From Podarcis pityusensis (taxonomy: Eukaryota), in assembly GCA_964106645.2 (NCBI GenBank), contig OZ067038.1: a stretch of 64,000 nt of DNA. One strand, 5' to 3'. Each line of letters begins with the position of its first letter. Positions within the stretch are counted from its first letter, which is position 1. Of the stretch, positions 30,201-60,505 are shown in pieces. Position numbers and translations under genes: made by a program. The notes below the pieces were generated by a model, which worked only from the letters and a program-made list of their open reading frames with translations, ran no database searches and had not been told where the DNA came from.

Positions 30201-33105
30201 GCTCTGGTTCGATAATGTATTCTGTATATGGCAGCAGTGGGAAAGAAAGCAGGGATTTTTAGTACAGGCACCTCCCCATTTGCACCTGATCATGCGTGCG
30301 ACTGCTGACACACTCATGCCTTTTTGGGGGCCCAAGGGGGTGGAGCAGGCTGGAACATACTTGCATGTGTCCCAGAGCAGACCCCCTGCATAAGCAGGGA
30401 TTCCCCTATATATCATTTTTTTCCCCGTATCCAGAAATTCCCTACCAAAATGTGACAGTTTGTTTACTTTTTATTTTCTTTTGTATTTTTACTTAACATT
30501 CTGGCATTTATGGCAGTTCCTAAGCAACACGACTGGTTCAACAGTCTGTGGCTTTTTAATGTGTTCGTAGGAAGGGGTTATTGGTTTTTGTTGTTCATAG
30601 AATCATAGAGTTGTAAAGTACTACAAGGGTCATATAGTCCAATCCCCTGCAGTGCAGAAATATTTCGCCCAGTGTGGGGCTCAAACCCATGACCCTGAGA
30701 TGAAGGGTCTCATGCTCTGTGGACTGAGCTGTGTAGAAGAGGATATTATGTTATGTGTTTTGATTTTGTAAACTACCCTATGAAGGGCAGTATATAAATA
30801 AATAACCTTGAATTTATTTCCTCTAGTTGCTTTTCGGCTATATGATCTAGATAAAGATGACAAGATTTCTCGAGAGGAGCTGCTTCAGGTATGTTTAGCT
30901 TTTGCAGCCCATAAATTAATGCAAATTTTTCGGATGACTGTCTTATTTAGCCTTTAAGGTAAAGTCTGGTTGAATGATAATACTAAATTATTATAATACA
31001 TAGGTATTATATAACAATATAACTATAGTAGCAGCTGAGGTAAGAAAAGACTTTGTGAATCTCTCCCCTCCATTTTAAATCCCCACACCCACACAGATAT
31101 TGCTCAATCTTTAATCTCCTCTTGTCTGCCTAGGCTGTGTGACCCTGTTCCAGGCTGGGGACAGGATTGTGTAGCCAGTGCAGGATTAAACCCTGTTCAG
31201 TAGTGATGTCAGCTCATGGGCAAATGGGTGTGCTTTTGGAAAAACAGCTTGGCTGCTCAAATTGGCACACAGGCCAAACATTCCTCACCCAATGTATGTC
31301 ATGAGGCTAAACTCTCCTTGCTATAACAATAAAAAATATACTCTGGTTCAAAACCAGCAGCTAGCCCCAATCCTATAAAGCTGTGCTCTTGGTGGTGGGG
31401 AAAGGTATTCTGTGAACCTGGAAAAAGTACTTAAAGGTTTGCACACCATGGTATGCCATAGTTACAAACTGTTAGGGCTTATCATGAAGCTCTTCTGGTT
31501 GTTCTAGAGAGAACTAGCCCACAAGTACTGGTTTGCACACAAAGCTAAGCTAGTAGTGTGGTTTGTTTGTTTGACAAACTGAGAAGCAAGGTGGGCATGA
31601 TTTGAGCATTTCACACCAATGTGCTGCTCATTCAAAGAATGCCATACTTGGTTTGTGTAACAATGGCTTACTGTATTATTTTATACTTTCTGGATGTCCC
31701 ATAATCATATTATATAAATAGTTGTGTTCTGTGTTATAAATCAAGCATTGCTGGGGGTTGTTTCTTTTTGCTTTCCAGTGTATTTCTTATCAATAAAAAA
31801 TTTGGTGTGGCGTGAGCAAATTTTTACTCTAAAAGGGTGGCCCAGAGAAAAAAGCGGAGAACTTTCTGAAAATTGTTAACTTGCTGGTCTGAGAATTCTT
31901 GAGATGAAAGTTGTATTTGTAAGTGGTGCACTTGACATTATTCAGTAAACCTGGACTGATCTCCTTATTTCTAGAAAGAGCTTCCTTAAACTGCCTCAGT
32001 ATATTTTATTTGAGGCAGTGCAGTAAATGGTGGTCTGTGCAACGTCAAGGTGTATAGTACCTAGCACCCAAGGACAGATAAGGTATTTTTGCACCTGAAG
32101 CAGGAAATGTCCCAAGCACCTCTCCTTGGGAACAATAATATAATAATTAAAAATTGCTGCTGTTTTGTGATATTTAAAACCAGCTGCCTGATCGGGCTGG
32201 TCCTGAAACTTCACTTGGTTGACTTAAAATAATAGCTTTACTTGTCTGGTGCCTTCTTAGCACTTACAGCATATTCTTTGTTAAACACTAACATTACATT
32301 CTTTTGGGGTTTCTGTATACTGCAGGTTTTGCGGATGATGGTTGGCGTAAACATCTCGGATGAACAGTTGGGCAGCATTGCTGACAGAACAATCCAGGAG
32401 GCTGATCAAGATGGTGACAGTGCAATCTCCTTTGCAGAGTTTGTTAAGGTCAGGAAACAATGTTTATTATGGCAAACCTGATTAAGTGCTTGGATTTCCG
32501 AATCAGATGTGCAATCAAATGAATAGAAGGCTTATGTGCATAATTTCTTCAGTTATTTTGCTATTTCCCATATCTGAACATAAATTGGCAGAGATGTGCT
32601 CTTCAGCTTCATAACAATTGCAATTTATCTTATTTGCTTAAATGATTCTTGTTAGACTTGTTAGTTTTTCTAAATATTTTTAGTGTGTGACAACTTTGCA
32701 TGCTGTTCCAAGGCATGATCTGTGGGTACATGATAAAGGAGCCTTTCTTGAAATTAAGCTGATTTAGTTTGGTTAGTGCTTTGATAGACTGCCCAGGGAT
32801 CATCTTGAATTCCATAAATGCAATTAAATACACTCCAAATGCAAGTGTTGCTAAGTACAGCTTTCATTTTCCATAAAATATATTACTGATGACCTCTAGG
32901 TCAAGATCTACAAAAAATAGTTCTGCAGCACAAGAGGAGATGCAGTAGGAAAGCTGACAAGAATGGCTTCCTAAGACAAGACTAAAGTCTAAATGTTGAG
33001 AGAGAATTCGATTCCTGTGACAAATGGTTAACAATTCTACTTTTTTTGCAGGTTTTGGAGAAGGTGGATGTAGAGCAAAAAATGAGCATTCGATTTCTTC
33101 ACTGA
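14590..33105 (+). CDS. CHP1: CHP1 calcineurin B homologous protein 1, complete CDS, 195 aa; join(14590-14656, 20985-21057, 27920-28000, 29060-29187, 30827-30888, 32326-32448, 33052-33105)
   Basis: 588 nt spliced: [71 protein letters not shown]...EF-hand loops [12 protein letters not shown] and [12 protein letters not shown]...[12 protein letters not shown]-myristoylation motif MGxxxS. Confidence 0.98.
16801..17053. mobile_element. hAT-type non-autonomous DNA transposon
   Basis: TIRs TAGGGGTCGGCAACCT / AGGTTGCCTACCCCTG; 8-bp TSD GTTTAATA / GGTTAATA. Confidence 0.8.
18753..19110 (-). mobile_element. Sauria SINE, full length, nested in the (ATT)n tail of an L2-type fragment
   Basis: Complete head-to-tail match to the other copies; ATT repeats on both sides. 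Confidence 0.92.
20985..21057 (+). CDS. CHP1: CHP1 exon 2
   Basis: ttcag|[24 protein letters not shown]|gtaggt. Confidence 0.97.
21458..21878 (+). mobile_element. Solo LTR (421 bp) in CHP1 intron 2
   Basis: TGTCAGG...CCTGACA termini; perfect 5-bp TSD TAGAC (21453-21457 and 21879-21883); internal AATAAA 21807-21812. Confidence 0.8.
27293..27571 (+). mobile_element. Sauria SINE, 5'-truncated
   Basis: Core and CCTTTACCTT tail present. Confidence 0.88.
27920..28000 (+). CDS. CHP1: CHP1 exon 3
   Basis: tgtag|[26 protein letters not shown]|gtaagt. Confidence 0.97.
29060..29187 (+). CDS. CHP1: CHP1 exon 4
   Basis: tatag|[24 protein letters not shown]...SRSNKLY|gtaaga. Confidence 0.97.
30596..30730 (-). 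mobile_element. tRNA(Lys)-like SINE with CR1-type tail
   Basis: Reverse-complement homologue of 35842-35983. Confidence 0.7.
30827..30888 (+). CDS. CHP1: CHP1 exon 5
   Basis: ctctag|[21 protein letters not shown]|gtatgt. Confidence 0.97.
32326..32448 (+). CDS. CHP1: CHP1 exon 6
   Basis: ctgcag|[41 protein letters not shown]|gtcagg. Confidence 0.97.
33052..33105 (+). CDS. CHP1: CHP1 exon 7 coding part
   Basis: ttgcag|[20 protein letters not shown]. Confidence 0.97.
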   Translation, partial: VLEKVDVEQKMSIRFLH

Positions 33106-36969: not shown

Positions 36970-38270
36970 TTTGGACGCGCTCACTTGAGAAAATTAGTGG
37001 CAGCGGGCACGAGCATCCTACTGAGCGAGGAGGAGGAGCAGCTGCGGGGGGAAATGTAACAGAATAAACAAAAGTACAATTTCCAATTTGCGCATTCCCG
37101 CCACCGCGCACAACCCCTTCCTTCCTTTAGGAGGCGTCCTGAACGACTGAGTACAGCGAACGCGTAACCCCCGCCTCCCGGCCGTCCCACTTCTTCAACG
37201 CGGCGATAGGCCTCGCGAGGAGGAAGGCGTAGACCACATCGCAGTTGGCCAATCGCCTCTCAGTGTCCAGCCGTTTGGGGAAAGCCTACCCAATGGCAAC
37301 CCAAAGCGGAGAAGTGAGTGACAGGAGAGCGGCCCACTCGGTGGGACCCGCGTTCTGTAGAACGGCCGCTGCGTCGCCCTGCGCCGGCCTCCCATTGGGC
37401 GCTCGAAGTAAGGAGGGGAAGATGGCGGAGTGAGGGGGAAGGAAGGAGAGCGCCGTGGGCTGCGGCCCTGGGGCCTTAACTGAGGTAAGACATGGCGGGC
37501 TCAGGGGCTTCGGTGGGGAAGGTTCGTGGGCACGAGGGCCTGTTGGACAGAAAAAACCAGCCTTGAGCTTGGAGCTCACTTGGCGAAGCCCGTCGGTTGA
37601 GCCGGCCGGAACCTGCTCTCTTTCTACGTGCCCGTCCCGGTTCTGTGCCGCTGGAGAGAGACAAGTTCTGGGGTCCGGAGCTTATTCTTATTACCTCAGT
37701 TCTGGCCTTTTACCTCATAAGGGGCCTCCTTCCTCCTCCTCGTCCGGGGTTTGTGAGGGTGGAAGCAGCTCGCTTTTCTCTGCCTCCAGAGCCGCAAACT
37801 TGTAAGCGGGCTACGCCTGGAACGAGGGGGTCGAGAATCGCTGCGTGGCCTCGGTGGCCAAGCCAGGGCGATCCCCTCCTTTCCCCTCTCCCCTTTCCCC
37901 TACCTCCCCAAAGCTGGCAGTGAGCGAGGGCTTGCTGGTGAGGCCCTGCACGGGCGAGGTGCTCCAGGCACCCGGCGCTGTGCAGCGGCCAAGAGAGAGA
38001 GAGACAAGGCACACCGCCTCTCTAGTTCTCGAGCGGGTGGGGTTGGCGAGGCATTGCTGCGGGTACTTGGGCCTCACTGGGCGTCCCAGTGGCGAAGCCA
38101 TCGCCTGCCTTCTTTCCAGTGTTGAGAAGTGGGTTGGGGGTCGGTGCGCATTTTCCAGGGGGGTCCTCTGTAGCTCCTGTGTTTTTCGAGGGAAGGCTGG
38201 AGTTCGTCGTGCCTGCAGCAGACTAGCCCGGCCTCTAGTCATCGTTACTGCGCAGGTCCGATTATGTGTC
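36970..38270 (+). promoter_or_regulatory. CpG island promoter of OIP5-AS1/Cyrano
   Basis: CpG-dense with no credible ORF; CCAAT at 37249 and 37290; ATTGG at 37394; palindrome CCTCGCGAGG 37211-37220; YY1 motif AAGATGGCGG 37419-37428; strong donor GAG|GTAAGA at 37484/37485. Confidence 0.85.

Positions 38271-40291: not shown

Positions 40292-40324
<33 letters not shown>
40292..40324. repeat. (TA)n microsatellite abutting the Penelope remnant
   Basis: Directly visible. Confidence 0.9.
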
Positions 40325-40327
<3 letters not shown>

Positions 40328-40625: not shown

Positions 40626-43600
40626 AGAATAATGGAATATTACGTTGTACTGATATTGCAGCCATTGCACTTGAGTCTCAGCGGTGCTGTTCCATTATTA
40701 GATCTTGCTTTAAATTAGATGAAGTACAGAAATTTCAATTCCTATAACAGCCCTTTACTGTTGAGTACTGCCAAAGTACCTGTTATAAGTAATTACATTT
40801 TACTATCATTCACTTCATTGGTTTTATTTACTATTTTAAGAAAGCAGATTAAAACTGCTTGGTACTAGAATCATTATAGCTGCTGACTAAACTGTGTCCT
40901 ATTCCCCTGCTCTGCTCAGTGCAAAGTGATTATTTTAAAACATAGCTTCCAGTTTATATTTTGCTGAATGGAGTAGGGAGATAAGAGTTTCAGATTCTTT
41001 TTTGGCCTTAGTCTTATTGATGACAAAATTCTGTAAATGAAGAACCACTGTTCTGGGGAATTGATTTGCATCACAAAATAGTCCTGGGCACCCCCTTCCT
41101 CCAAGCTTTACATAATGCCATGTTAGCATCATGATAATGTATTAATACATTAAACATTTCAGTGTTGCTGTTCAGGGTGAAGGGGATTTATATTATTAAT
41201 TGGGTGAGTAGACAACCTGCTTTGTGAATGTAGCAGTGATTTCAAAAACACAAACCTATTTTTAAATCTTGCATTACAGTTTCAATACCTTGACTTGCAT
41301 CTTCACCTTCCACGGGTTTTCATGTGAGTTGGGTATAATTCCATCATGTCACTGGAAAATCTTGCATTATTTTGTTATGAAAATACTCTCAGATATGTGG
41401 AGAGGTGACTAGAACTGAAAGTAGTACGTATAGCAGCCAAGTTCTCCCACTCTCCCCTTCCTACTTTCTTATTAGTTAAGTAGCTCAGCATTTCAGTTAC
41501 TGTAATTTATCAAGAGAATTGTCAAAGAATTTAAATATGCTTAAAAAAATTCTTGAGTAGTTAATGCGGTTTGATTTTTAAAACGAAATTTCAGAGTGCA
41601 AGATGGTATGAGAATTTAAAGACCATCTTAAATGGCTAGAAATTTCTAAAGGTGCTCACACTTCTTTGCCTTTAAAAATATTGTGTATTGCAGAAAGTGA
41701 ATAAGCACCAGAATGCTGCTGTTTGTATGTACCGGGTATATGTGTGTGTTTAATTGTATGATGAGCACCCCTGCTCACAGGTGATCCATCATTCTACTGC
41801 TAGACTTGTCAGCTTTGCATTCTTAAGACCCGAGTGTAGTCCTTCCCTTTGAAATTTAATTAGAAACTGCGGATTTTCTGATCATCTCTATTTGAAACAC
41901 TCCATTCTTTCCCCGAGAATTGCATATTACTTGATTAGATAGTAATTTGAGGGAAATGTAACCCTTTGTGCTTCTTTAGTTATGACTGCACTGTTATAAG
42001 CTGTTGAAGAAATGCAGAGGCTCTGAATGAAAAATGCATTCATTTGAGTATTGCATTTCTGACTGCTCAGTGAAGGCTAGGCAAATATGATCTTGATGAA
42101 TTATACCCTGATGTTAAATGCATTGGCTTGAAGATAAGAGCTCTTTGATGCAATACACAGCCTGCTACCACTGTATGGAGCAATAAAGACAAAGTCCAAA
42201 GAAGGAATTGTAACTCCAAGCAAACAGTGGAAAGGTACCAGGAAGGCAAAATCAATTGGTAGCTCCTGTGCACATGTCCCCAAGCGTTTGGGATTCACCT
42301 GTACCTTTCAGATGCTGTACATTTCAGAAGTGGTGTGCATACTTGTTGGGTTTTAGAGACTGTTGTAAATCATGGTTTGCCACTAATCATGATTAGAAGC
42401 TTCTGGTTGTGTCACATTTGCCAGGGGCAGGAGGAGAACAGGAGTGTGCAAGTCAGCTTCTTGTGGCATAGTTAGCATTGCATCTACATAATCCCATTGA
42501 TTACAATGAGCACTTCTATTTATTCCTTAAGACAAAACTTAGGAGATAATTTATGCCTCATCTTGAAAGGACATTGTCTGTTATACTAGCAGGCTGTGCA
42601 TTGTCATCATGATTTATATGGGTTCTGGCACCTCTTTGGTGCGTTCCAGCACCTCTGTAGCATTGCAGCACAGGGGCACAGTTGCTCAGGGCTGCGCACC
42701 AGAGGCTGCAGGTGGCACTGCACTCCATGTTGAGCAACTGAGGCTGTGAGTGGCACAGTCTCCGGTGCGGCGCAGCGGCAGTGGGGTGAGTGGGCAAAGA
42801 AGAGAGCCCCCCCCCCAAAATGGTCACCAACTTTGGCTGGGCACTCCCCTAAGAAAAGCTCAACAAGTTCCAGTGCATCTTCCTGGAAGAAAAGCCCTGG
42901 TTGGAGACTTTTTTCAATACTAGGAAACCCAGTATCTTTGGATAAGAAGAGCAACATGTGATACATTTTTTTCTGTGGCCTGAACTTGAGTTCCTTTCCT
43001 GTTGTGTGCCTAGGTCCATGCATGCACCATCTTGATTGGCAGTCAGAATAAGAAAATTATCAGAAAGCTAAAGGCAAGAGTTCCTGGTTATAATTTATGC
43101 AGCCATAAAGCAAAAGGTAAGTGTTGGTTTAACCCTTCTTTGGATAATATGAAAGCCGTTTGCTGCCTAGCATCCTAGGAATAGTGTTTATGTTATACAT
43201 TAAGCCTGCAACTTACACACATTTAACTACTGCGCATTAAGCTTTACCACTTGGCAAAATAATAAAAATAAGTAAACGGATTTGCACATCCAGGAAAAAA
43301 GACTTTGGCAATTGCACCCAATGTGTTTTGACTATACATGGTTTTGACTTTAGGCACAATTCCTGGAACATAACCTCCAGGTAAGTTGCGGGCTTACTAT
43401 TCTTGGTTCAGATGAGAGCATACCATTTGGAGTTTTTACTAAGAGACTTAGTAGTTTTGTTGACAACTCCCTTCTCATGCAGTTCTAAAACCAATAACTA
43501 TAAATAACCCCTTCCAAAATAAAGACACCACACATGAAAGTTAGCTTTTTATGATATTGCTTGACTGATGTATGATTTTTAAAAGCTCTCAATCTTTTCT

Positions 43601-46600
43601 TACACAGGGGAAAACATTCTTGTGGTTGCAGTCAAAGAATCAGGAGTCAGAAAATTACAGTAGTCTTATGCAACAGTAAGTAAATATGGAAAGGTGGTGT
43701 TAAGCTGAATTGACAGAAATTATTTCAGGTCCTTGGATAGACATCTATAAATGTATAAAGTTGGATAAAAGTATCTGGGTGTTTTCCACTACCCACTTGA
43801 AAGTGTTTTTCCAGCAGAGGAGAAGTGGAGTCTTGGATGTGTTTACACTGCCCTGCTTGGTTACCTAAGTGGGCTCGGCAACGTCTCTCCAAATTCACTT
43901 CCTGCCAGCTGGACTGCAGGTTGACAGTTATCACTCTCTCTCACTAGATGAATGCATGGGACAATGGCAACCCAGATTTTCTTTTTCTTTTTTCTTCCAT
44001 CAGTCTGCCTTTCTGTGCTCCCCCCTTTCTCCATCTTAGCAGGATGAATCTGCCAACCCTCTCTGGAGTCATCCAACTAGGGGGGAAGGAAGCTAGGTCT
44101 CCCATTTCCCCTCATGACATGAAACCGACTCATAGTCTAAGTGTGCTGTATTGAAATGATGAAACACTCACCAACTGCTCACAGTTTCTGTTTATTCTCT
44201 GAAGTTTTCTTCCTCTGGCAATCTTTTTATTCCATTGCAATATTTGGATTAATTAGCATTTATCCCTGAAAAAGGCTTATTTCCTACAGCTTGAATGATG
44301 TACCAGGTAGACTTCTAGCACTGCTTGTATATAGCATTGGCCACAGCAATCAGGATCTGTTCTTGGTGTGTGAAACCTGAGGGGTCCCAGAATAAGAACT
44401 GCTTGGAATACCATGGGGGGGGGGGGTCACAGGCACTGTAATTCACCTGTAAAACAATTCCTCCAAATCTTTAAAAGTTCCAAGGTTCCCATAAAATGTA
44501 TGTGTGAAGTCAGTTTCAACTTAATTTAGAGTGAAATTACTTTCTCTTTTAATTAGCTAATTTGTGTGTGTATGTTTCCAGGTCCTTTCCTGTCAACCCA
44601 ACACAGGCTGCTAAAGGAGCTTTGACGGCTTCTGGTGAAGAAAACTGCTTCCTTTATCTCCATGAGGGAAATGAAGGAAAATGAAGAAGCACTGCTTATT
44701 TTCTGCTCCACTCCTTAACATGAATTGGAGATGTAAAGCCTGTATTATAGAAAAAAAAACTACTGTCCTTTCAGAGCAACTGAAATTAATGGCTGACATT
44801 TCACTGAAACATGCAAACTTTTTGTTCAGAGTTTTTGCACTCTATAAATGATTGCATATAGATAGAGGCATAACCCTAATTTGATTGGCATTTCCCCGCT
44901 TTCAAACTACCTTGGTAAAATAACTGCCTACTCTCAACATAGCATTTAGAGAAGCGAGCAAATTGATATATCCTTGGAACTTGTTACACAAACCTTTAAA
45001 GAAAATATTGCGCAGAAATAAAAGAATATACAGGTGTACTTAAAATGAGGAATAACTTTTTAAAAAGGAAAAAAAAACACCTTGTGAAATTGCCCTGTTG
45101 GAATTTTTCTCCTTTTAAAAGGAGCCAATTTATAGGTGTCCATCTTGATGCCATTATGTGAAGCAGTTGAAGCACAGTAGCATTTAGTAATTTTGTTCAC
45201 TGTTTTGAGTAGACTATTAAAAAACAAAACTTGCATATATAAATTTACATAATTGCTGGAAAGGAGAGGTGATCCTGTGAGTTGCTGCTTTTCTAGCAAG
45301 ATCCTTCCCAAGGGGTTGAATTCTTGAAACCAAACCCAGGAGCAATGGGTTTTACATGGTATCCTCAGTCTTCCTAGGGAATTCAGCAACAAAAGGAAGA
45401 ATACCTTTCTCCAAGCTTTTACCCAAAGGCACCAACTGATAGTGTAAAATATATGTGAAATTTCCCACCAGTTGGATGAACAAAGACAACACATGCTCAG
45501 AAAGGGCTTCTTCACTAATTCTGTGGGTCACTGAAAGTTAACGTGGAAATTCTGTTTCTAACATGTTTACAAAATATGCTTTGTCTCAATTGCACATGAT
45601 TCATATAGGACATTTTCTTTAGCATGGAATAATAGCTGATTTATTAGCCATACCTTGCAAGGGTAGATTGATTCCTGGTTTTTGAAAAGTCTCCCCCGCT
45701 TCCTTATGCTGAAGCCCTCAGCACTGCACCTTCAGTCTTACTGAAAATGTGAGTTTAAAATCTGCCAATGGCTTCAAAATATTTTCAATCTGGGTAAAAA
45801 AATGGGAGTGCATGTTATAATGGTCAGTCTTGGTTATTAACATTTTCAGTGCTACTTGATGTCTGGTTTGAGGTAGCAATGGCAATATTTCCTGAGATGG
45901 AAAACAGCGGCTGTTTGGGGTATTTAATAGTTTTGAAAGGAGCATCCCAAGCTAAATACTGGTATTTGCTCATCACTTAATCTTATGTTCCTTTTATATA
46001 ATAAAAGATTCACATAAATACTTAGGAAAGCTTATTCAGATGCTTTCCTTAATTCAAATCAGTTTTTTTAAAATGGAATGTTTAATAGAAGATTATCAAA
46101 CAGGTAAATATTTATAACTACTGAACATAATCAGATTTATGACTTGGGTCAGCTTGCTGGGGGGGAAATTGTCATGGTTGTCATTTAGATTGGCTTTGAA
46201 GTATACTTAAATCCTAATTCAAATAGAAGTCCAGAAATAAAAGTAGTTGGATTTCCTTCTAGGTTCTTCTGAACAGGAATTCCTGTTTAATTTATTGGGA
46301 TTTTAGATATAGGGTTAGGCTTCTTAGTGAAACATTCTCTCATTCTGGAGCTGAAAATTCAGAAGACATCAGGTGTAGTGATGATTTGCTTCTATGTCAG
46401 TAGACTTTATGTTGTCTTCCTTACGTACTTCTCTCATATTTAATTTGTAAAAGAATATGCTGGCACAGAGTGAAAACGCTTAGTTTCCCTAAATTGTCAG
46501 GATAGATATAAGAGAAAGTGGCCATATCAGTTGCACAAAATTCCAGCAAAGAACAACTCCCCCATCCCTTTCCCTCAAGCTCCCCTGACTACATGAGGAC

Positions 46601-46862
46601 TCAGTTTAAAATCTTGGAGAAACGAGTGCTGTACATGGCCCAAGAAACCTGTTTGTAGTACTTCTCCTGTAGCATCTTAAAAGTACTGTGTCAAGGCAAT
46701 ACTGCCTTAATCTTTTTGTTTTACATTTTGATCTGCATCTCTTCATGTTGGCAGGAAATCTTTCCTTTATGAAAAACAAATACTGGGGCACGTGCAATAG
46801 TATAATATATACATATAAATATATTTTAATACTTGTGGACAAAATGTTACAAGTTGTTTGAG

Positions 46863-46888
46863 AACAACAAAATCACCAATGTCTTCCA
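46863..46888 (+). promoter_or_regulatory. Extensively paired miR-7 site (TDMD trigger) in Cyrano
   Basis: GTCTTCCA (46881-46888) is the 8mer for miR-7 nt 1-8; AACAACAAAATCAC (46863-46876) pairs perfectly with nt 11-24; internal loop CAAT opposite UA. Confidence 0.96.
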
Positions 46889-49800
46889 TTTTGAGATGTG
46901 TATAGTTCCATAAGCATTAGTGCTTTGTAGCAAAACTGTAGTGCCATTTTAGGATCAGTGCATGAGCCTAGTAGTACTTTTTTTACAATTTCAGAGTGAC
47001 AAATTAACAAGGCTGATGGTGTAATTCATAAGAAACTGACAAGATTATGGTCATGAGCTAAGGATGCAGTGTCCTTTCTAGGCAATGATAGCTTATATTG
47101 GTGAATAAAATCAGTAGCATGAGGAGTGCATGGCTCTTGAATCTGTAAGCAGGTAGACGTGCACCTCAAAGAAACTACAATTGAAACAGTCCTTAACAAA
47201 TCTTTTTTTGAGCAAATAATATTTTGCTACAATGGGAAAATTCACTGATCTCTTGGACTAAGAAGTTTCACAGATTTAAGTGTGCATAAGGCTAATCTTT
47301 GCCACAACATGTTCTCATAAAATGTCCCTTCATATATGACTGTTCTCCATTCAGAAGAGCCTATAAACTTTTACTCAGTTACCCACTAGTTGCATATTTG
47401 CTCATAAGTACCCTTATGTTAGAGCAGCACATCATCTATCAAGTTGAAAAAATGACTAAATTATAAATAATAACACTGCTACTGCTATTCAAGATTGGTA
47501 GTATTCATTTTTGAAAGCAAATGATTCTCATTTTTCTACTTCCATAGAAAGCACCTGAAGGAGTTTGCTGTTTTAAAAATTTTTAAATCATTGCAGTACA
47601 ACTATTTGGGTCACTAAGATGTCTCCCTGCTTATATTATCAATTTGCTTTTAGTTCAAATAAGTGAGATCAGCAATTCAGGCACCTGATTTTTCTGTGCA
47701 GATCCTGTAGTCTGGACTGCTGTGATTCTGTTTTTAGAAAACAACTACTTGTAGCTTAAAGAGGATACTGCATCTTTTTCTTGGTCTTGTCTGTAAATGG
47801 CTACCTTGGTGAGGAAAAAAAATATTTCTGGTTTTGGTTTACCATTGGCTAAAAATTCATAGGAAACATTTAATTAACCACAAAACAAGAGATCTATGTT
47901 TAAAGGTCTCTGCCTATTCTCCCTTGAAATTTGGGAAGGTGGGTTGTTTACAAATGAGCAGTGAGGACCTGAGCTCAGCCAAGGTTCTGTTGGAAAGAAA
48001 TGTATCTGTCCCACTGAATGAAATAGTTTTTAGTGCTTGGGAGAATCAATTGATGGAAAAATACCTCTGAAACTGGAATGCAAAATAGCACAGTATGTAG
48101 GGGGAAAGAATCCCTGATGCAAATAAAGCCATAAGATGACTTAATCAATAGAACTTTAGTAGCAATAACTGTTTGCATGTAATAGGAACTACTTGCATTA
48201 GCAAGTATTGTATAGTAGAATAAATGGTACTAACCAAATAGGTTTGTGGTGCTCTGTGTTGCAGGGAGTTGCCTGACATGATGAGTTTTCTCTTTAAAAT
48301 GTTAGGAAATTCCTCAAAGGAAGTTGGCACTTGAATGCTTTATTGAGGAGCCTGTTTAAAACTCCTGCATAGCTCCCCCCCCCCCATTGATGCAACTAGG
48401 GCAGAAATTTGTTGTGGTCATGGGCTAAAGATGCAGTGTGCATGAGAAAGTGGATGAACCCCTGTCCTCCTTGTCAATAGATAGCATGTAGTTGAACTTC
48501 TGGTGTGAAAGGGAACTCTTCAGAGACTGTGAACAGGGCCAGGTTCAACCTAAACATGCAATTTAGATTTGATTGTGGAAACTTGTTGCCATTACCTAAA
48601 GCTGGTTAGATGTGTCAAATTTTTGAGGAATGTTGGCAAGGTACAAAGCATCCTAGCACCTAGCAAGTGTTGTGTCTCCTGAAAATGTTATTTTTCTCTT
48701 TAAAAAAACCTTTTAAAAACTTGTACGCCTGTTACGTGGTTTCACTCTTAATTATAAAAGCTACTTTTGAGTTTGGAAGCTTCTATTCTAGATGGGTATG
48801 CCTGGCAATCTTACCCTCACCACTCTATAGAGTGCAGTTCATACCTCTTTAAAATGCAGCTTGCACTAACCTAGTATGCATGTAAGACCATGTAAACTGT
48901 AAGCCTAATATGTAACTCTGCCTTAAACAGGATTCAGCTGAAGTAGAACAGATTCATCTACAAGGTTGGGATGTATACTTGAAGGCTTTACCTTTATTGT
49001 TTTCCTTAATTGCAAGGAGTTATATCCCAGCTGGTATGTGTCTGCCAACAGAAGGCTTTTGAATAGGGATCAAGGCTATTTTGGGTAGTTCCCCTCCCCT
49101 CAACAGCTGCCCATACTGTTCCAAAGGGCCCACCAATTCTCCAGGTCAGATTTGAGTGGGAAGGAGGAATCACTGAAGAGTGCCTCAACCCTTTTTCCAC
49201 TGATGGCTCCACTGTACTAAAGAGCCTTCCATAAGCAGAATATGGCCAGAGGGTAGCCAGTATCTATCATCAGTCTGATCAACACAGCCATCTGTTCAAG
49301 TGGATGGAAGAAGCCCATATTGTAAAAGTAGAATTGATATGTATTCTGTACAGAACAACCCCTATATATTCATTCTGTAATATGAGCTTTACTAATGGTT
49401 TCCAAAATAGTGTTTGAAATCTGAATCAAGGAGACTGTCCTTTATATGTGAAAAAATAGTCAACAAAAACCTGTGACTATTTTGTCACAAAATATACAAG
49501 GCACTTTTTACTGTTTTCAAACAAACATGATTCTAGGGCTAAGGAAATTTGCACTTTGTTAACCATTCTGAGCAAACTGGCAGAATCTGAAAGGCATATC
49601 ACGGCTATGCCACCAGTAGGACTTGCTTTGCTCTAAATTTATTTTGAGTTGCTGGTTTGCAGATACTTTTCAATTTGCAAAACTGGTGCTTGACTGACAT
49701 AGTGCTGCTGCTACCCAATTTAATAAATAATGAGCTTTTTAGCTTGGTATCTGGATAAGTGTGTGAGCTTCATACATGCAGGATTTGCTGTTGTGGTGCT

Positions 49801-52800
49801 TAGTCAGAAACATTTAGGATGTGGTTAACTGTTTGAAGATGCTTGGCTATCTTGCATAACCTCATAATGGAGAGCTTTGCTGCCTAGATCTATAGAAATG
49901 AGGGGTTCTGTTACTCCAGAGCAGCCTTTGCCAGCCTGGTGCCCTCCAGATGCTTTGTGCTGTAGGTCCCATCAACCCCAGCAGCACATCCAAAACAACT
50001 GGAGGACACCTGTGAGAGGCGGCTTCAACAAATTGCACTTAAGCAGTTTGCACCTCAGTAGCTGTAGTATTTAAACTCCTGAAGGTTTAGCACTGAAATT
50101 TGTTTCCATAAGCAGTTAATGAGGGGAAAGATCTTTCTATGAAGTGGCTCTTCATGGCACATAAGCAGCACTTGGGGTATACATGGTGTATACACCACCA
50201 CCTCGCCTTCCATTTATTCTCCTAACAGCCTTTATTCTATCAGTGGAGAACAGGATTTCATTCTAAGTATATTAGTGCCATTCTTTATGAATGGTTGCAG
50301 GGGGCTCTTTTTTAATAGTCTGTCTCTATTCTACATGTGCACTAGTTTTTACGATAAAATCCCCCTTACTTGACTTCTCCCTTTTAGACCTTTTATTCTT
50401 GCTTTGCACTTTGAAGAATAGTAATTATTGAGCAGTAGAAGTCCAAGCACAATACATGGGTGCCAATAAATGTATTTTCCAAACAGGCTTCTGGGATATA
50501 GATGGTAAGTTTGCAAGTGGTAGCGTTGGATCTTTGCAACAGGATTTGGAGGCCTAAGCTGAACTGAATTTTTGTACCATGCTTTATTAAGTACTTGAAG
50601 ATTGAGGGTGGGGGTGGAGGAAGGACAAGGAGTTTATGCCCTCACCCTGTACACAGAAAGGCAATGAGTTCTCCCTGCCCTGAAATGTAGAGGAATGGTC
50701 AGCTAAGTGGTGCTCCCCAAAGACTACAGGAATAAAAGCTTAGTAGGGTATCTGCTGAACAAAGAACTCATTTGTATGAAAGGACTCCTATGACGGGAAT
50801 GTGGAAAACAAAATACTAGAGAATGAGAATATGTCATGTGATGGGGCAGGGGAGAATGCCCCAAGGTGAAGATTTCCTACCTAACTAGATGAGAAGAAAG
50901 CAGGTTTAGAGCTGGAAATTGGTTCTATCTGGGGGGGGGGGGGGGCAGGATGAAAGCATTCGAGTTTGATCACTTGCTAGTTCGTTTTAGATGGAATTGT
51001 CAACTTTCCCTAATTACAGCACAATGAACATACCACAGAGTTTAGCATTTAAATAGTTGCAACTTATCTGTCCTCTGCTATCTTTGACAAACCCTTGGAC
51101 GGCAGATGAGGTTGTGAAACTCAAGTATGGAAAACATACATGGAAAATTGACAATGGCACAAGCACATAGGCTCACAAACCAAGTCTTTTATAGAGGTAG
51201 TATTCTAATTATGCATGATTAAGATGTCTAGTGTTATAGTTATTACCAGTAAATTGATATATGCATTTATACATAATGAAGCAATAGGAACTAATATACC
51301 AATAGCTTGAACTTACTGCTTTGATTCTCAGATTTTGATTTTAGAGAACATTCTGTCTCTTTAAAGGAGGCAGAATGTACAAATAAGAGAAGCATGACAC
51401 CAAAACTGTGTATTTGAAAGAAGAATCAGCAGAATGAGCCCTTTTGACCTCTTACCAGGTTCATTGTGTTCCCTTGAGCCTACATAATATGAGCATGGTT
51501 GGTGGTAAGATGGGTTTCTTGGCTGCTGCAATTGTACAAATAAAAAAGGTGCAGAGTTTCAGAGTACAGAGAAGGCACTAGATGAACCCCAAATAGGGCA
51601 ATAGCAAAATGTATGTAGTAGGATTTTTCAGGTAACAAGAAGGAAGGAACCTGGATCACAACCTGTTGGCAAATAAATGAGAATTTAGGTGGATGAAATC
51701 ATTAAGCAGTCCTTACTCTTCAGGTATTGAGTTTAAATGACAGGTTCTCCCCGCCAGGTATCTCTCACCCTGTTAGGCAGCTATACCAAGATGAACTGGT
51801 TTCAGACCAGCATTAATATACCTTACAATAACTAATCTGAAAATGGCAAAGTTCTGCTTTAGACACAAAGCAAGGTAAAGCTTGCTAAGTAGGAGTGGAG
51901 CTTGCTAACTAGATTCAAGAGAGTAAATGGCACCCCCATAAAAAATTATTGGTTTAGTTACAAAAAAAGTAAAGTGGGTGCATTTAATGGTAGAATATAT
52001 ATGCTGAATACGTAGAGGATGGTAGAAGCATAGCCCTTTTATCTAAACCTGGACTAGAAAATTATTTTCCTAATGTGAAGGTGCTGCTTAAAATAAACAC
52101 TGAGTTTAAAGTTCCTTAACTAGATTATGGCTATACTAGTTTCTGCAGAGCAAGTTACAAACACTTCTTCATATCAAAGTTTGTTTTCTCATAGATCTGA
52201 AAAAGGGTTCGTTATGGCAAATCTGCATTTTATGTTAGTGGTTATTTTCCCAATCATTTATTTTAAGCTTGTTATAGAGGCCATATTTTTTACATTGCCA
52301 GTCTCAGTAATTAGTAGCTGCCAAATAGATGTATGAATATTGGAGACGTGAGTGCAGGCTTGTAATGACATCAGTTTGACTTCCCCTCTGATTTCATGTT
52401 AACATGAAAATACTCCATAGTATTTTATCATTGAATTGTTTTCCCCAAACTCTGTCCCTCTTGTAGGTTGTGATTTAGGTCTCTGCTAATTAATTTCTTC
52501 TTTCAGAGCAAAGAAAAGATTGTCTTTGCAAATGCATAGGATAACTGATCATAATAAAAGGATTGTGAAAGCTAGTCTGGGAAAATGTACAGAAACATTG
52601 TATAAATTTTAGAAGTAGGCTTAAATTTTGTTAACTCACTTGAACAAGCAGAACAGACAAGAAAGGTATATGCCACTGCAAACTATTTACTCCCATTGCA
52701 CAATTATGTAACAAATACCACAAATCTACCCATGTATATATCTGAAGATTTCCAAAAGGCAGCTTGCTTTTATATCTATGCATCTTTTGGGGAGGGAAAG

Positions 52801-52889
52801 AGGGTGTTAAAATTATTCTTTTGACACTGTAAACAATAATTGTTCAAAACTGAACCTGGAAACTCTGCACCTGTATACAATTTTTTAGC

Positions 52890-52895
52890 AATAAA
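52890..52895 (+). terminator. Probable distal Cyrano poly(A) signal
   Basis: AATAAA with several TGTA (CFIm-type) motifs in the preceding 300 nt. Confidence 0.5.
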
Positions 52896-53171
52896 GCAGC
52901 ATGGGCTGAGAATGCACTTAAAATGCCATTGTGTCATTTATTCTAGGACAAACTCTTGAAATGATAGAAATGTAGGTTCACATATTTCAAAGTTTGCCCT
53001 CATTGTGGAGCAGGAGAAAGATGTTTAATCATTGCAAGCTTATATGATTGCTGTGAAACCCCAGCAGCTTTTTAGCACATCTGAGCCACTTCATACTCAT
53101 GTATTTTTCAACAATTATGTGATTGGTTGCCATGTGTTTTGCAGTGCCTCTTCTCCCTCCTCTTCCCAATA

Positions 53172-53375
53172 TAGTGGTACCTCGGGTTACATACGCTTCA
53201 GGTTACAGACTCCGCTAACCCAGAAATATTACCTTGGGTTAAGAACTTTGCTTCAGGATGAGAACAGAAATCGTGCTCCGGCGGCGCAGCGGGAGGCCCC
53301 ATTAGCTAAAGTGGTGCTTCAGGTTTAAGAACGGACTTCTGGAACAAGTTAAGTACTTAACCCGAGGTACCACTG
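53172..53375. mobile_element. Tc1/mariner (Tigger-like) MITE
   Basis: TIRs (T)AGTGGTACCTCGGGTTA / TAACCCGAGGTACCACTG flanked by TA on both sides. Confidence 0.82.
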
Positions 53376-54163: not shown

Positions 54164-54319
54164 TTAGTTCAACTTCTTCCTTGTTCCCCCAGATGCTTGG
54201 CCATGTAGTCTTGCTTTGTAGATCTGCTTTTCAGACATCAACTTCTGCTGGTTTCTTTCTTCGAGTTTCTCAATCAACCGTTCTATCCGTATGTGCGCTA
54301 AAACAAGGCTCTCCTTTAA
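54164..54319 (-). CDS. OIP5: OIP5 exon 5 coding part
   Basis: ttgtag|LKESLVLAHIRIERLIEKLEERNQQK...GTRKKLN TAA. Confidence 0.9.
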   Translation of the reverse strand, partial: LKESLVLAHIRIERLIEKLEERNQQKLMSEKQIYKARLHGQASGGTRKKLN

Positions 54320-57300
54320 CTACAAAAAAATAATAATCACCAAGCTTAGATAAAACAAAGTGATGCAGAAAACCAATTATATCAGCCAAATCTTTGTCAG
54401 TGAAAACAAAAAATTGTCCAATATTTTAAGTCCAGCGACACACCTTGTAACTATGCATTTGAGAGGCATCTCTGTTAAAGGTGTGGGAGAAAATCAACAT
54501 TGCACCAAGGCTATTCTGTCAGGTCAAGCATTTTGGCTTGCTAGATGAATCAATCCCCTTTACCTGTTTCGGGTGTTCTCTCAACCAAACACCCCCTTGA
54601 CCCAATTATAGAGGGCACAGGGGAAGGAGGGGATGGAACCCCAGTGCACAAGCAGAAGTCCTTGTTCAGGGTATCTCTCATGTATCTTGGGGAAGTGACT
54701 AGGGCAGCTGAGCGCTCCTTCATTATAGCTCTCCAAACTTGATTGGCATGAACCCAGTATGCTGACAATCAATTCTTCAAACATCGTGTAAGACAGTTTG
54801 TCATGTGCAAATTTGGTTCCACTTGCTCCTCACCTTTTAGCCCACCTCACTGGCCTCGGATGAAAGCCGCTACTGTCAGCTGTGTAGTCTGACACTTAAT
54901 CATACTTGGGAAGATTTAAACTCAGGTAGGTCCCCTATGGCCTACCATAGCTGTTTGCTAGCATGGTCAAGGGTTGCCCATCCCTGATTTAAACAGTTCT
55001 ACTTGATCTAAAGAAATGATGAAGCTGTACAGGGCCTGTTCCAAACCTCTCCAACTGCACAGAATCCACTGCGGCAGCTTTTTCATTTGGGTAATGGCAG
55101 AAGCCTCAGAATATGTGAGGAGTCCACAATGCAGTTCCTACCAGAACTGGGGCAACATTAGTGCAGGAAGAAGCCGTGCTGTGGACTCCTCTTTTATAGC
55201 ACAGAAATTCTCCTGTTTCCTCAAGTGGCACAGGAAAGTCAAGCTGGAACAGCTCCTATTTGTCTCCGATAAAGTGAGGACACACTCTCTGAATATCTTA
55301 TTAGCAGAGTATACCATATTTGCCTTTGGTATTCAGCTGCCAAATGTGTTCATGTGCTCTTTGGTTTAAATGAGCAAAGGACTGTATTAAGCTCAATTTT
55401 ATGGACTGCTTGTTTTGAAAAGCTTGTTTATGAAAACAGGATGCTGTAGTTAGTTTCCAGAAAATATTTATAATTTAAACTGAAAAATGTTAATATTTAC
55501 TAGTTTGAAGTATAAATATTCTCTGGAAACTAACTAGAGCATCCTATTTTCATACAACCATGTGCTTGAAAGAACAACCGGTGTTGGCTAAGTGTGCCTG
55601 GGAACTACCGTATTTTTTCTATTTCACAGACTTGGAGGGTTGCCTTTGATTTGCCAAGCCTCAAAACAGTTTGTGCCCATTATTATTACTAGAAAAGAGC
55701 CTATGTTTCCATGTTCCATAAATGTCTGAAAGACTGCTCTGACTACTCCTTTTAAACCTCAGTCTAATATATTGTGCAACAGTCTATACGAGAAACCCAG
55801 GTTCAAATTCTGCCCTGTCAAAGACTATCAGCACAATTCTATCTATGTCTGCCCATAAGTAAGTCATATTGAATCAGTGATTTCGGTGGGCCTTATACTC
55901 CCAGGTGAATGGGGTTAGGATAGCAGCCTTAAAAAAGTTCACTAGACGCTCTCTGTTGCAAGGGTTGCAAAGCTGATAAGAGCACTTAGCATGTTTTGTA
56001 ATGGTACATATTTTTGTACATTTAGTCACATTTTTATCTGCCCAGTTCCCCTGTGAGAAGGGGAAAACAGTAGTTAACAAACACAAAAACAGAAGAACAC
56101 TTACTTTCTGTACTTGTTCCTTTAGGCTCACAGGAGGACAGGTCATCTTTGAGGCTTCAATTGTCGTTTTAGTTTTTAACAAGTAACTGAAAAACAAGTT
56201 TAAAGACAATACATTTTGAAATTAGCTGATCAGTCACAGGAATGTATGAATAAAGGAGAGGATAAAAATAATTTATATTGCAATTTTTCAGAATATTGTG
56301 TCCAATTTTTTCAACATTTTTGTCTACTCCAGCAAGAGAAATCTAAGCATTCAAAAGTGAAGATTATTCATAATAACAACCATGTAATAGTATTTTGCCA
56401 GCATCCTGATTTCAATAATTATATCCTAACTTGTGATATAATTTCCTGAAATTAATAGGTTTCCACAATCTGATACTGCAGTACATTTCAGATTCGTAAC
56501 AATGTATTTTGAAGGACCTAATTATTCAATATACAACACTTATTTTATTTTCAAGAAAATAACTTCTCGCCTCTCCTGTCCCTTCCTCAAGTAGGCTAAA
56601 CTTTTGTGGTCATAGATCACTTCTGTTTTATAGCCAGTTTTAAGCCCTTTCACACAGCATATTCAAAGGTCAATGCCTTATCATGAAGTAATACTTAAGC
56701 AGCCAATCAACAAGTAAATGTCATCCACTGAAAAGCACCGTCTTGAGCTGTGACATTACGGTTTCTCATTCACAAGTCAAAACACAAGACTGCATGATCA
56801 TTGTTTAGCGTAATAGCAAGGCTATTCAAATCCCAGGTCAGCCATGAAGCTCACTGGGTGACTTTGGACCTGTACTTCCCACTAACCATATAGTACTGGG
56901 CTGTTGGGAATCTAAACTGGAAGGGAAGCAGTCCCCTGAGCTCTTTGTAGAGGTGATGGGATAAAAAAAAGGGGGGGGGACAATTAAGTGGAGTCGCCCT
57001 TAAGATCAAGAAAATATGAATGGTACTTTCCAGTTGCTAATTGAATAAATCTCCTAAACTTGTATCCCACTGGAAAATTAGTTTTAGATCAGCTCTCACA
57101 ACAGCATGGTGTTACTCCTGGAATAGTTATTTTCAGTTGTATAAACGCCTGCTTCTACCCAAACATTAGCTACATATTGTGCTGCTGTAACTACCACAGC
57201 ATAGTGTCTACAAATGATGCCATCAGCCAGTATCTCTTTTGGAAAAGCCTTTTTTTAATCCTTTGCATGCCTTTTTATGAAACCTTCATATATAAACTTA

Positions 57301-60053
57301 TACAGGATGTCTTGTATGTGTCAGTTTGTTACCCTTCGTTTTACTGGAGTTTATCCGCATGACTTAACCATCTGATCAGTTCAATATGCATCTGGACACT
57401 AACCATATGATGTTGTCCTTCAAAAGGCAAAAGAAGCCTCGCAGGTGAGCCAGAGGTTTTGAACAATAGAGTCTGAAACCTATTCCCGCTTTACATTCTC
57501 GACAGTACAACATGTTGTAGGTGCTGGGGAAAAAAGACCAGGTGTGCAGTCAGCATTCCATAATCTGCTTTATGACCAAACTAGGGGCTTCAGCCATCAT
57601 AAGCAACATTTTTGGAATTTGCCCTAGAAAATCCAGAATTATTCAGTTATAAAAACCAAATTTAGAGTAACTTTTCAGAAGTATGCATCTTTCCATTAGT
57701 AGATAGCAGGCATAGGCAAACTCGGCCCTCCAGATCTTTTGGGACTACAATTCCCATCATCTCTGACTGGTCCTGCTAGCTAGGGATCATGGGAGTTGTA
57801 GGCCAAAAACATCTGGAGGGCCGAGTTTGCCTATGCCTGGTATATAGCTTCCAAGTTTACAGGGGAGAGGGGTGTTGCAAAAGCCTGTATGAACATATTC
57901 CTTGTGATAAGAATGCAGCATGGTTTCCTTACTACAGAATATGCATCCTTAAACAAAAGATGCTGCATTCATCCAAAATATTTACAAAGAAGTCCTATGA
58001 GGGCAGCGGTGGGAGAATCCAAGGTGGATGAGAAACCAAATCGAAAGCTCTGCGGAGCTGGTAGGGCAGAAAATTGGGGTGGGGAACAAGGAGGATGTTT
58101 CCAAATTTCTTCTTTCACTGGTTCCCATAACATCTTATTGTTTTCACAGTCAGAAAGCTAGAGAAGGCAGAAACCTTTCTCTGCCCAGATCTTTATCTAT
58201 ACTCTTCTAGGACCCCAGGATACCCGCCCCAGGAAACAAAGGAAAGAAGAGATGCAAAAAGAGCCATTTCTCGGAGACAAAGGGTGCTCACTGGGAATGA
58301 AATAAACATTTACTTAAGCCAGGCATTTTATTTTGAAAAAGTACTAAAAAAAACAAGTCTGGCAAATCAAGTATTTATTTCATTAGCCACCTTCCCCAAG
58401 TCACATGCAAATAGAACAAAAAGGTGGCATAGGGTTCCAAGATATTCTTGCTCTTCTAAGCATCTGATGTAGTAAATTTTAATTAAAAAACAAACTCACC
58501 ATCCATTGAGGTCTCCCTCAATGCAGACCATCAATTTATCTTCCACTACAACATCATTTGTAACCTCTGAAAAGAGCAGACCTTTTGCAGATTGAATAAA
58601 GCTAAGCATTCATCAATACATTACATTCAAACACTTTATTTCATTTAATATTTATTCAGGGACCTGTTAAGACACCTGTAAATTATTCAAATAAATCTCA
58701 TAGAAACAAGACTATCTTCATGCTTGAAAAATAAGAGACATCTACTGCTAGAATTACTGCAACATGCACTTTAGGTTTAATATATATTATTACAGGCATA
58801 TTTAAATTACTGAAGCATTTTACGCAAGCTAAATCTAAATTAAAAATGTCACTTTCAGAAATCATAGTAGAAAAGGGACTCTCACTGAAGATTGCAAAAG
58901 TGGATTCCTGTTATGATAGAAATTAATGCTGTACTTTGGAATTCACACCATTATTTAGATCATGGCTTGATGTTGATTTATTTAACATTTGTTAAGATTA
59001 AACAGTTTATTGGTTTGGAAATGAAAGCTTCTGAACTCCTCATGGCTATGCCACATGAGGAGACGAGGCGGGAATCACCCCAACAGAAGGCTCTCCACAG
59101 CTTATTCACATCACACTAAATTGGTTTAGTGTGTGAATGTGAATGTGGCCTTCTCAGCCTCAGAATGGTTGTGGGAATAAGGGCAAGTGGAGTGTCATAT
59201 ATGGCCTGAGGTCCACATTCATGCTTGGTCAACCCTGTAGGGTCTCTCTCTCTATATATATATACACACTACTCTCTGTCTCTCTCTCTCTCTCTCCTGC
59301 TGCCAATACTGGCAAGGTCTCATGGGACTACATCATTTTTGTTTTTTAAATGTATTTTTATTGCTTTTATTTCTTATGCATTATATTTCAGTTTGAATTA
59401 CATTTGAATTACAAGAAAATACAACATAAGAAATGAAAGCAATCAAAATCAAACAGCACATGGCAGAAGACATCACAAAAATCATGAGCCACGACCACCA
59501 ACATTTTTCAAGTGGCCAGCGGGGGGGGGGGGGGAGAGAGTTTTGAGCTTCGCACGATCCCTACATAAATGTAACAGGTGTAATGATAACCCGTGTACAT
59601 TGCCACGTGCGACAACAATCCTGCGTGTATTTATTTGAACATCTGTGCAGCCTGACTGATGAAGAGCCCGGTGTAGCTCGGAAGTTCGCACCTTTTCTTT
59701 TTCTAAAGAAAAGAAAGCGCCTTTCCCTTTTCGCTCCGAGGCTGCCAACCCAACACTCAAAAGAGTGTGACTCACTCACTGAAGCAAACGAGAAGGCGGA
59801 GCTTCTCCTCCTGGGCGCAGAGATGAAGCGAGTCGCCCAGCACCGAACGGCAACCGCGGCACTGGTAGAGCACGCAGTCCTCCAGCCTGAGACTCCGGGA
59901 GCCCGGAACCCGCTCCCCGGGGTTCTCCGGAGGCTTTGCGCTTTGCTGACCATGGCGGCAGCTCTTCGTCCCGGGTTCCGCCCGATCCACCCTGATCACG
60001 CCTCCCAGTTGGGGCTCCTGGAAGAAAAGCTCCAGCTGCCGCCGCACGGCCAT
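54164..60053 (-). CDS. OIP5: OIP5 / Mis18beta, complete CDS, 232 aa; join(complement 59780-60053, 58500-58566, 57404-57523, 56105-56186, 54164-54319)
   Basis: 699 nt spliced; Yippee/Mis18 zinc ligands CRGC and CREC; DCVLYQCRGCRSVLGDS, KVTNDVVVE, CTYNMLYCREC, LRGFFCL, CYLLKTK; C-terminal coiled coil LKESLVLAHIRIERL. Confidence 0.95.
55429..55554. repeat. Long inverted repeat (53-bp arms, 20-nt spacer)
   Basis: 55429-55481 versus 55502-55554, about 48 of 53 complementary. Confidence 0.85.
56105..56186 (-). CDS. OIP5: OIP5 exon 4
   Basis: tttcag|CYLLKTKTTIEASKMTCPPVSLKEQVQK|gtaagt. Confidence 0.94.
57404..57523 (-). CDS. OIP5: OIP5 exon 3
   Basis: ccccag|CTYNMLYCRECKAGIGFRLYCSKPLAHLRGFFCLLKDNII|gttagt. 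Confidence 0.95.
57707..57839. mobile_element. hAT-type MITE
   Basis: 29-bp perfect TIRs CAGGCATAGGCAAACTCGGCCCTCCAGAT; 8-bp TSD GTAGATAG / GTATATAG. Confidence 0.85.
58500..58566 (-). CDS. OIP5: OIP5 exon 2
   Basis: tttcag|KVTNDVVVEDKLMVCIEGDLNG|gtgagt. Confidence 0.94.
59780..60053 (-). CDS. OIP5: OIP5 exon 1 coding part
   Basis: MAVRRQLELFFQEP...CVLYQCRGCRSVLGDSLHLC...LVCF|gtgagt. Confidence 0.9.
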
Positions 60054-60505
60054 GTTTCTTCCCGCCAACTTTTCAAACTCAGTCCCCACCCCCTGGGGCG
60101 CCTATTGGGGCAGTCCCTCATGACGCTAGCAGGCTTTCCCCCCTCCGATTGGGTGCCGCTCTTACTCATCAAGCTTTCCCCAACCAGTCGCGTTTTCCAC
60201 CCAAGGGGCGCTTTTGTTTTACCTCGGAGCGTGTGGAGAGCCGGAGAAGCCTTCGCGCCTTTTCGAAACAAGGAAACGAAACGGTGGTGGGGTTTGTTTG
60301 TTGTTTGTTTGTTTGTTTGTTTGTCCGGGGTTCCTATTGGCTACGAGCCTCCTTCGAGCCCCACCCACTTTCGCTTGCGGCTCGACCAATGAGACGGTGC
60401 GAGAGGTGATTTCGAAGGCAGCGCGGCTGGGAGGAAGGACGGCGAGCGCTGAGCGGGCTGGTTTGAAGTGCGGCGGTTGGAGCGGTCGGTTGGCTAGAGG
60501 CGAGC

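What the first reader, a model, noticed from the sequence alone, without database searches (positions are those of the whole stretch)
46863..46888. Intact miR-7 degradation (TDMD) trigger site marks a lizard Cyrano lncRNA
Seen: AACAACAAAATCAC-CAAT-GTCTTCCA, which pairs with miR-7-5p (UGGAAGACUAGUGAUUUUGUUGUU) at nt 1-8 and 11-24 with a central loop over nt 9-10. Established: this architecture in mammalian Cyrano triggers ZSWIM8-dependent destruction of miR-7 and acts upstream of the Cdr1as/miR-671 circuit. Inferred: the same miRNA-decay module operates in this reptile, although Cdr1as is regarded as mammal-restricted, so the downstream wiring may differ. ORF-based annotation cannot detect this site.
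Basis: partly seen in the sequence, partly recalled or inferred. Interest (0 to 1): 0.85.

Follow-up and report, generated by a model that had tools for sequence, protein, structure and literature searches.

The report
Lizard copy of Cyrano lncRNA
This is the reptile's copy of Cyrano, a well-studied vertebrate non-coding RNA whose 26-letter site marks the microRNA miR-7 for destruction in mammals; it is intact and transcribed, as expected for any bony vertebrate.

Summary
Observation confirmed. The 26-mer at 46863-46888 pairs miR-7 nt 1-8 and 11-24 around a 2x4 loop, the published Cyrano geometry (duplex -29.6 kcal/mol; next best in the window -20.6). It lies between CHP1 (+) and an OIP5-type Mis18 gene (-). 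The published Cyrano motifs flank it in order and at the published spacings: TISU micro-ORF, miR-25/92 site, Pumilio-like element, Rbfox, miR-153 site, poly(A) signal. RNA from a close relative, laid beside the conserved core, shows a spliced + strand transcript. One 8.6-kb contig implies a 3' end at the predicted poly(A) signal, so it spans the site. The gene is the Cyrano (OIP5-AS1) orthologue. ZSWIM8-dependent miR-7 destruction in this animal is inferred from mouse and human work, not shown. Cyrano is already known from fish to mammals, chicken and frog included, and its origin before Cdr1as and miR-671 was already discussed in 2018. I found no paper on a squamate copy. Ordinary: a new member of a known kind.

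The parts
46863..46888 (+). miR-7 trigger site: 14-nt match to miRNA nt 11-24 (46863-46876), 4-nt loop (46877-46880), 8mer seed match (46881-46888)
   Evidence: geometry as published
37400..37484 (+). Exon 1 in a CpG island; 3' end exact (donor GT at 37485), start approximate
   Evidence: loose read ends in three RNA runs equal window 37453-37482; CpG island 37001-38500
37419..37433 (+). TISU-like start context with a 3-codon ORF (Met-Ala-Glu-stop, ATG at 37422); conserved Cyrano element 1
   Evidence: described in PMC7798263
41280..41323 (+). Optional 44-nt exon
   Evidence: GT..AG joint 41323-43014 in 10 bulk and 2 single-cell reads, with exon-1 loose ends; boundaries
43014..43116 (+). Internal exon
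   Evidence: joints and depth in three RNA runs; boundaries
43608..43675 (+). Internal exon
   Evidence: joints and depth in three RNA runs; boundaries
44582..52915 (+). Terminal exon of about 8.3 kb holding the miR-7 site; longest ATG ORF 69 codons; 3' end approximate
   Evidence: continuous stranded depth 44582-46550 and an 8,600-nt contig with 6,408 nt left at 46550; 14 RNA-like runs hold 47200-52700
46792..46799 (+). miR-25/92 family 8mer site, 63 nt upstream of the miR-7 site; possible extra pairing over 46783-46790
   Evidence: PMC7798263, 10.1101/820548
46899..46905 (+). Pumilio-recognition-like element TGTATAG, 10 nt after the site
   Evidence: PMC7798263
46959..46965 (+). Rbfox motif TGCATGA, 53 nt after the Pumilio element (published: about 55)
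52776..52782 (+). miR-153 seed match CTATGCA, 105 nt before the poly(A) signal (published: about 100)
52888..52895 (+). Poly(A) signal GCAATAAA (also a miR-137 match)
   Evidence: contig-implied end near 52,958
14590..32460 (+). Upstream neighbour CHP1 (calcineurin B homologous protein 1); coding exons near 14590, 29060, 30830 and 32330; limits approximate, last exon not mapped
   Evidence: PDB matches to CHP1/p22, E 1.5e-21 and 3.5e-6; EF-hand exons
54167..60100 (-). Downstream neighbour on the opposite strand, Yippee-Mis18 family, read as OIP5 (Mis18-beta); limits approximate
   Evidence: PF03226 on two successive exons, E 2.7e-4 and 1.8e-6; the name OIP5 within the family rests on my recall and on context

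Best explanation
The locus is the Cyrano/OIP5-AS1 orthologue: a spliced, polyadenylated non-coding RNA of about 8.6 kb made from a CpG-island promoter near 37,400 and ending near 52,915. Shown here: the site, its neighbours, the motif chain, and a + strand spliced transcript in a close relative. Inferred from mouse and human work: Argonaute loaded with miR-7 binds the site through the seed and nt 11-24; the 2x4 loop prevents slicing and bends the duplex; the miRNA 3' end leaves the PAZ pocket; a ZSWIM8-CUL3 ligase clamps the complex, helped by flanking RNA, and ubiquitylates Argonaute; miR-7 is then degraded while Cyrano survives and acts again. The output in this animal would be lower miR-7 and release of ordinary miR-7 target mRNAs, since Cdr1as is placental-only. 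The miR-92, miR-153, miR-137 and Pumilio sites most likely set Cyrano's own level. Orthology about 0.98; working ZSWIM8-dependent miR-7 decay about 0.88.
For: Site geometry and rarity equal the published one: 8mer seed, 14 contiguous 3' pairs, nt 9-10 opposite 4 target nt, wild-type loop length 4. Neighbours CHP1 and a Mis18-family gene. Four further motifs at the published spacings, rough joint chance 7e-11, plus the TISU micro-ORF. GT..AG joints, stranded reads and an 8.6-kb contig that matches the 8,585-nt model. ZSWIM8 and AGO contact residues are conserved across bilaterians (PMC13083262); mature miR-7 is conserved beyond the seed (PMC13125240).
Against: No miR-7 or ZSWIM8 data from any reptile. 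The RNA comes from a related organism (about 97% identical), and I stopped the read layout at 46550, so the site's letters were not read in RNA. I did not see this species' mir-7 or ZSWIM8 genes. In zebrafish, deleting the conserved region raised the transcript, unlike in mouse, so regulation may differ outside mammals (PMC6633201). Cyrano-like geometry alone did not always engage ZSWIM8 in synthetic contexts (PMC11662681).
Confidence: 0.88

Rival explanations
1. It is the Cyrano orthologue, but outside mammals the site works mainly as a high-affinity ordinary target or sponge: miR-7 destabilises Cyrano or is held by it, with little miR-7 destruction.
For: Zebrafish lacking the conserved region over-express the remaining transcript, whereas mice do not. 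I found no passage showing Cyrano-directed miR-7 loss in a non-mammal. The site is predicted to be partly buried in local stems (unpaired probability about 0.06).
Against: The geometry is the one that human ZSWIM8 recognises best; flanks act without sequence specificity; the same burial is described for human and mouse Cyrano, which work; the decay machinery is conserved to flies and worms.
Confidence: 0.1
2. The site belongs to an extended 3' UTR of CHP1 or to OIP5 antisense read-through rather than to a separate lncRNA.
For: CHP1 is on the same strand just upstream, and OIP5 converges from the other side.
Against: The locus has its own CpG island, and every spliced read leads back to a first exon ending at 37484. 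The 8.6-kb contig has only 60 letters before exon 2.
Confidence: 0.01
3. Chance match, or a silent remnant of Cyrano.
For: None beyond the absence of reads laid on the core itself.
Against: Chance about 1e-7 for the site and about 7e-11 for the other motifs; abundant spliced RNA in the relative, 14 RNA-like runs from 5 studies.
Confidence: 0.01

Closest known systems
Cyrano / OIP5-AS1 (human), Oip5os1 (mouse), cyrano (zebrafish)
   Same: Position beside OIP5 on the opposite strand; about 8 kb with a long terminal exon holding one miR-7 site (8mer, 2x4 loop, 14 3' pairs); TISU micro-ORF; miR-25/92, Pumilio, Rbfox, miR-153 and poly(A) elements in the same order and spacing (PMC7798263, 10.1101/279687).
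   Different: Four exons plus an optional fifth, where mouse has the site in exon 3. The 9-mer at the miR-25/92 site begins with C, not the U reported for all 18 species in PMC7798263; the 8mer is intact. No squamate was in that set. Function untested here.
Nrep (mouse) / libra (zebrafish), trigger for miR-29b
   Same: Deeply conserved vertebrate trigger RNA with extensive 3' pairing and extra ordinary miRNA sites.
   Different: Other miRNA and locus; Nrep encodes a protein in mammals.
Cdr1as / miR-671 / miR-7 / Cyrano network of placental mammals
   Same: Cyrano and miR-7 are its two oldest nodes.
   Different: Cdr1as is placental-only and miR-671 therian (PMC13125240), so the downstream half is expected to be absent. 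That absence was not tested in this genome.

Membership tests
Cyrano/OIP5-AS1 orthologue | 26-nt site complementary to all of miR-7 except nt 9-10 | tested here: met
   definition
Cyrano/OIP5-AS1 orthologue | Lies next to OIP5, on the opposite strand | tested here: met
   Yippee-Mis18 exons on the - strand downstream, CHP1 upstream. The name OIP5 within the family and the human gene order are from my own knowledge.
Cyrano/OIP5-AS1 orthologue | Ordered conserved motifs (AUGGCG micro-ORF, miR-25/92, Pumilio-like, Rbfox, miR-153, poly(A) signal) | tested here: met
   against PMC7798263; one letter outside the miR-25/92 8mer differs
Cyrano/OIP5-AS1 orthologue | Spliced long RNA with the site in the terminal exon | tested here: met
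   in a close relative; the site is bracketed by coverage and contig length, not read directly
Cyrano/OIP5-AS1 orthologue | No substantial coding frame | tested here: met
   exon by exon: longest ATG ORF 69 codons; at most 33 open codons enter the last exon
Cyrano/OIP5-AS1 orthologue | About 300-nt tetrapod-conserved core alignable to other species | not tested
   no vertebrate genome collection among the tools; no human sequence was fetched or typed
Cyrano/OIP5-AS1 orthologue | Cloverleaf fold around the site (PMC7430676) | tested here: inconclusive
   predicted folds give a 6-bp stem with a 4-nt loop and a stem whose loop holds CCAU, as described, but z-scores are +0.4 to -1.1
ZSWIM8-dependent TDMD trigger | [quoted passage not shown] | tested here: met
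ZSWIM8-dependent TDMD trigger | Target-side loop of 4 nt and at least 25 nt of untranslated RNA on each flank | tested here: met
   requirements in PMC13083262
ZSWIM8-dependent TDMD trigger | Mature miRNA rises when the site or ZSWIM8 is removed | not testable with these tools
   needs genetics and small-RNA sequencing
ZSWIM8-dependent TDMD trigger | Cognate miR-7 and ZSWIM8 present and co-expressed in this species | not tested
   not in the window (Rfam empty); no note in the scan's index; assumed from conservation

The most novel reading that the evidence does not exclude
The reptile Cyrano could be a two-miRNA trigger. Against it: the miRNA's last five letters stay unpaired, miR-92b served as an unchanged control in Cyrano-null mouse brain, and in mouse miR-92a represses Cyrano.
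Probability: 0.06. Interest if true: 0.55.

Novelty: new member of a known kind. Interest (0 to 1): 0.17.

Why it matters
Modestly. It adds a squamate gene model to a known vertebrate-wide family and shows that all published Cyrano motifs are kept in a lineage missing from the curated 18-species set. An animal with Cyrano but no Cdr1as is a place to ask what miR-7 destruction was for originally, but zebrafish, frog and chicken already offer that with better tools.

Tried and rejected
Rfam found nothing in the window. A perfect miR-7 complement with up to 3 mismatches is absent, as the loop predicts. PDB searches did not identify the OIP5-like exons or the EXD1-like exon. The NUSAP1-like first exon gave only a weak SAP-domain lead and no Pfam hit. 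Three papers asked for by PMC id (Kleaveland 2018 journal version, Ulitsky 2011, Hezroni 2015) were not held; I used the Kleaveland preprint. I therefore could not check whether Hezroni 2015, which I recall includes a lizard, lists a lizard Cyrano. Searches for a lizard Cyrano found no paper describing one. Local folding is no more stable than shuffles. Rbfox motif enrichment in the last exon is mild (5 against 1.8, p about 0.03); consensus Pumilio sites are not enriched. The spliced model was examined exon by exon; the joined step was left out.

Full report
Observation. Against the miR-7-5p sequence given in the finding, pairing is perfect for nt 1-8 and nt 11-24, and miRNA nt 9-10 face a 4-nt target loop. 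The duplex scores -29.6 kcal/mol; the best other tile of 12,779 on both strands scores -20.6. A composition estimate gives about 1e-7 such sites per window. The 8-nt seed match alone is at chance level.

Neighbours. Upstream on the + strand is CHP1: two exons match solved CHP1/p22 chains (E 1.5e-21; E 3.5e-6) and two more carry EF hands. Downstream on the - strand, two successive exons match Pfam Yippee-Mis18. I read this gene as OIP5; the name within the family and the human order CHP1, OIP5-AS1, OIP5, NUSAP1 are from my own knowledge. A NUSAP1-like first exon at 60500-60664 and an EXD1-like exon near 1300-1500 were seen by eye and not confirmed. CpG islands sit at 14,001-15,000, 37,001-38,500 and 59,501-61,000.

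Motif chain. PMC7798263 lists elements conserved in Cyrano across 17-18 vertebrates. Every one named in its text is here, in order. The TISU-type start with a 3-codon ORF is at 37419-37433. The miR-25/92 8mer is at 46792, 63 nt before the site (published about 60). TGTATAG is at 46899. TGCATGA is at 46959, 53 nt later (published about 55). CTATGCA is at 52776, 105 nt before GCAATAAA at 52888 (published about 100). The rough joint chance for the four non-miR-7 placements is 7e-11; the search windows were set around the published spacings, so this is an order of magnitude only.

Transcript. The core around the site is reported to be highly conserved to human, so I worked beside it. For 47200-52700, fourteen small RNA-like contig sets from five studies hold 56-61% of the sampled words, the same share as DNA runs of that organism. 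These are guessed, not recorded, as RNA, and come from relatives (organisms A and B); the best DNA holder is organism C at 0.92. For 40650-46550, a recorded bulk RNA run, a recorded single-cell run and one contig set of organism A show depth on exons and almost none on introns, while a DNA run covers all 30 bins. Joints are GT..AG on the + strand. First mates lie almost wholly on the - strand, as a stranded library of a + RNA would give. Loose ends equal window 37453-37482, so exon 1 ends at 37484. Exons follow at 41280-41323 (optional), 43014-43116, 43608-43675 and from 44582. One contig of 8,600 nt (depth 264) carries three of these exons and has 6,408 nt left at 46550. That implies an end near 52,958, against a poly(A) signal at 52888 and a model length of about 8,585 nt. 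The site therefore lies inside a continuous terminal exon, although its letters were not read in RNA. No exon holds an ATG frame over 69 codons. The model was examined exon by exon; the joined step was left out.

Mechanism. Published Cyrano has an 8mer seed site, 14 contiguous 3' pairs and two miRNA letters opposite four target letters. In mouse, loss of Cyrano raises miR-7 40- to 47-fold in cerebellum, and a 2-nt deletion that removes one seed pair and shortens the loop largely abolishes the effect. The cryo-EM study PMC13083262 shows a ZSWIM8 dimer clamping AGO2-miR-7-CYRANO, sensing the vacated PAZ pocket and the bent duplex; loop length matters, and 25-nt flanks help regardless of sequence. 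This site meets each sequence-level requirement. I infer the same decay here with probability about 0.88. The main rival, about 0.10, is that outside mammals the site acts more like an ordinary target: zebrafish lacking the conserved region over-express the transcript, unlike mice.

Comparison and novelty. Cyrano is described as conserved throughout bony vertebrates, with curated chicken, frog and fish copies. Its origin before miR-671 and Cdr1as, and the idea of an older role in limiting miR-7, are stated in 10.1101/279687 and PMC13125240. I found no paper describing a squamate copy, but two key older papers were not held. Differences from the published copies are small: extra short internal exons, and a C for U just outside the miR-25/92 8mer.

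Most novel reading. Mouse data point the other way: miR-92b tailing and trimming are unchanged without Cyrano, and miR-92a represses Cyrano. I put a two-miRNA trigger at 0.06.

Verdict. Real, correctly identified and ordinary: a new member of a known kind, interest 0.17.

Noticed in passing
window 46783-46799: miR-25/92 site: the 9-mer reported invariant in 18 species starts with C here instead of U; pairing to miR-92a can extend over nt 10-17 with two G-U pairs (miRNA from memory).
   Followed up: partly
window 41280-41323: Optional 44-nt exon, included in a minority of spliced reads of the relative.
   Followed up: partly
window 46853-46899: Predicted stems overlap the site: a 6-bp hairpin with a 4-nt loop and a stem whose loop holds CCAU, resembling two arms of the published cloverleaf; not more stable than shuffles.
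   Followed up: partly
window 40308-40585: Inverted repeat with 93-nt arms, 88% complementary, in intron 1; looks like a small non-autonomous transposon.
   Followed up: no
window 53165-53382: Inverted repeat with 45-nt arms between the Cyrano poly(A) signal and the OIP5-like last exon; looks like a MITE.
   Followed up: no
window 43210-43410: High-copy repeat in the intron after exon 43014-43116 (summed DNA contig depth 844 against about 14 elsewhere).
   Followed up: no
window 8216-9139: Reverse-transcriptase fragment (PF00078, E 2.8e-6), probably a LINE piece, in the region upstream of CHP1.
   Followed up: no
window 52895-54167: Cyrano and the OIP5-like gene converge tail to tail; Cyrano's predicted end is about 1.2 kb before the OIP5-like stop codon, so overlap looks small or absent despite the 'antisense' name.
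   Followed up: no
window 60500-60664 (+) and 1304-1495 (-): Exons resembling NUSAP1 and EXD1 by eye, which would extend the conserved gene order; tools gave only a weak SAP-domain lead for the first.
   Followed up: partly
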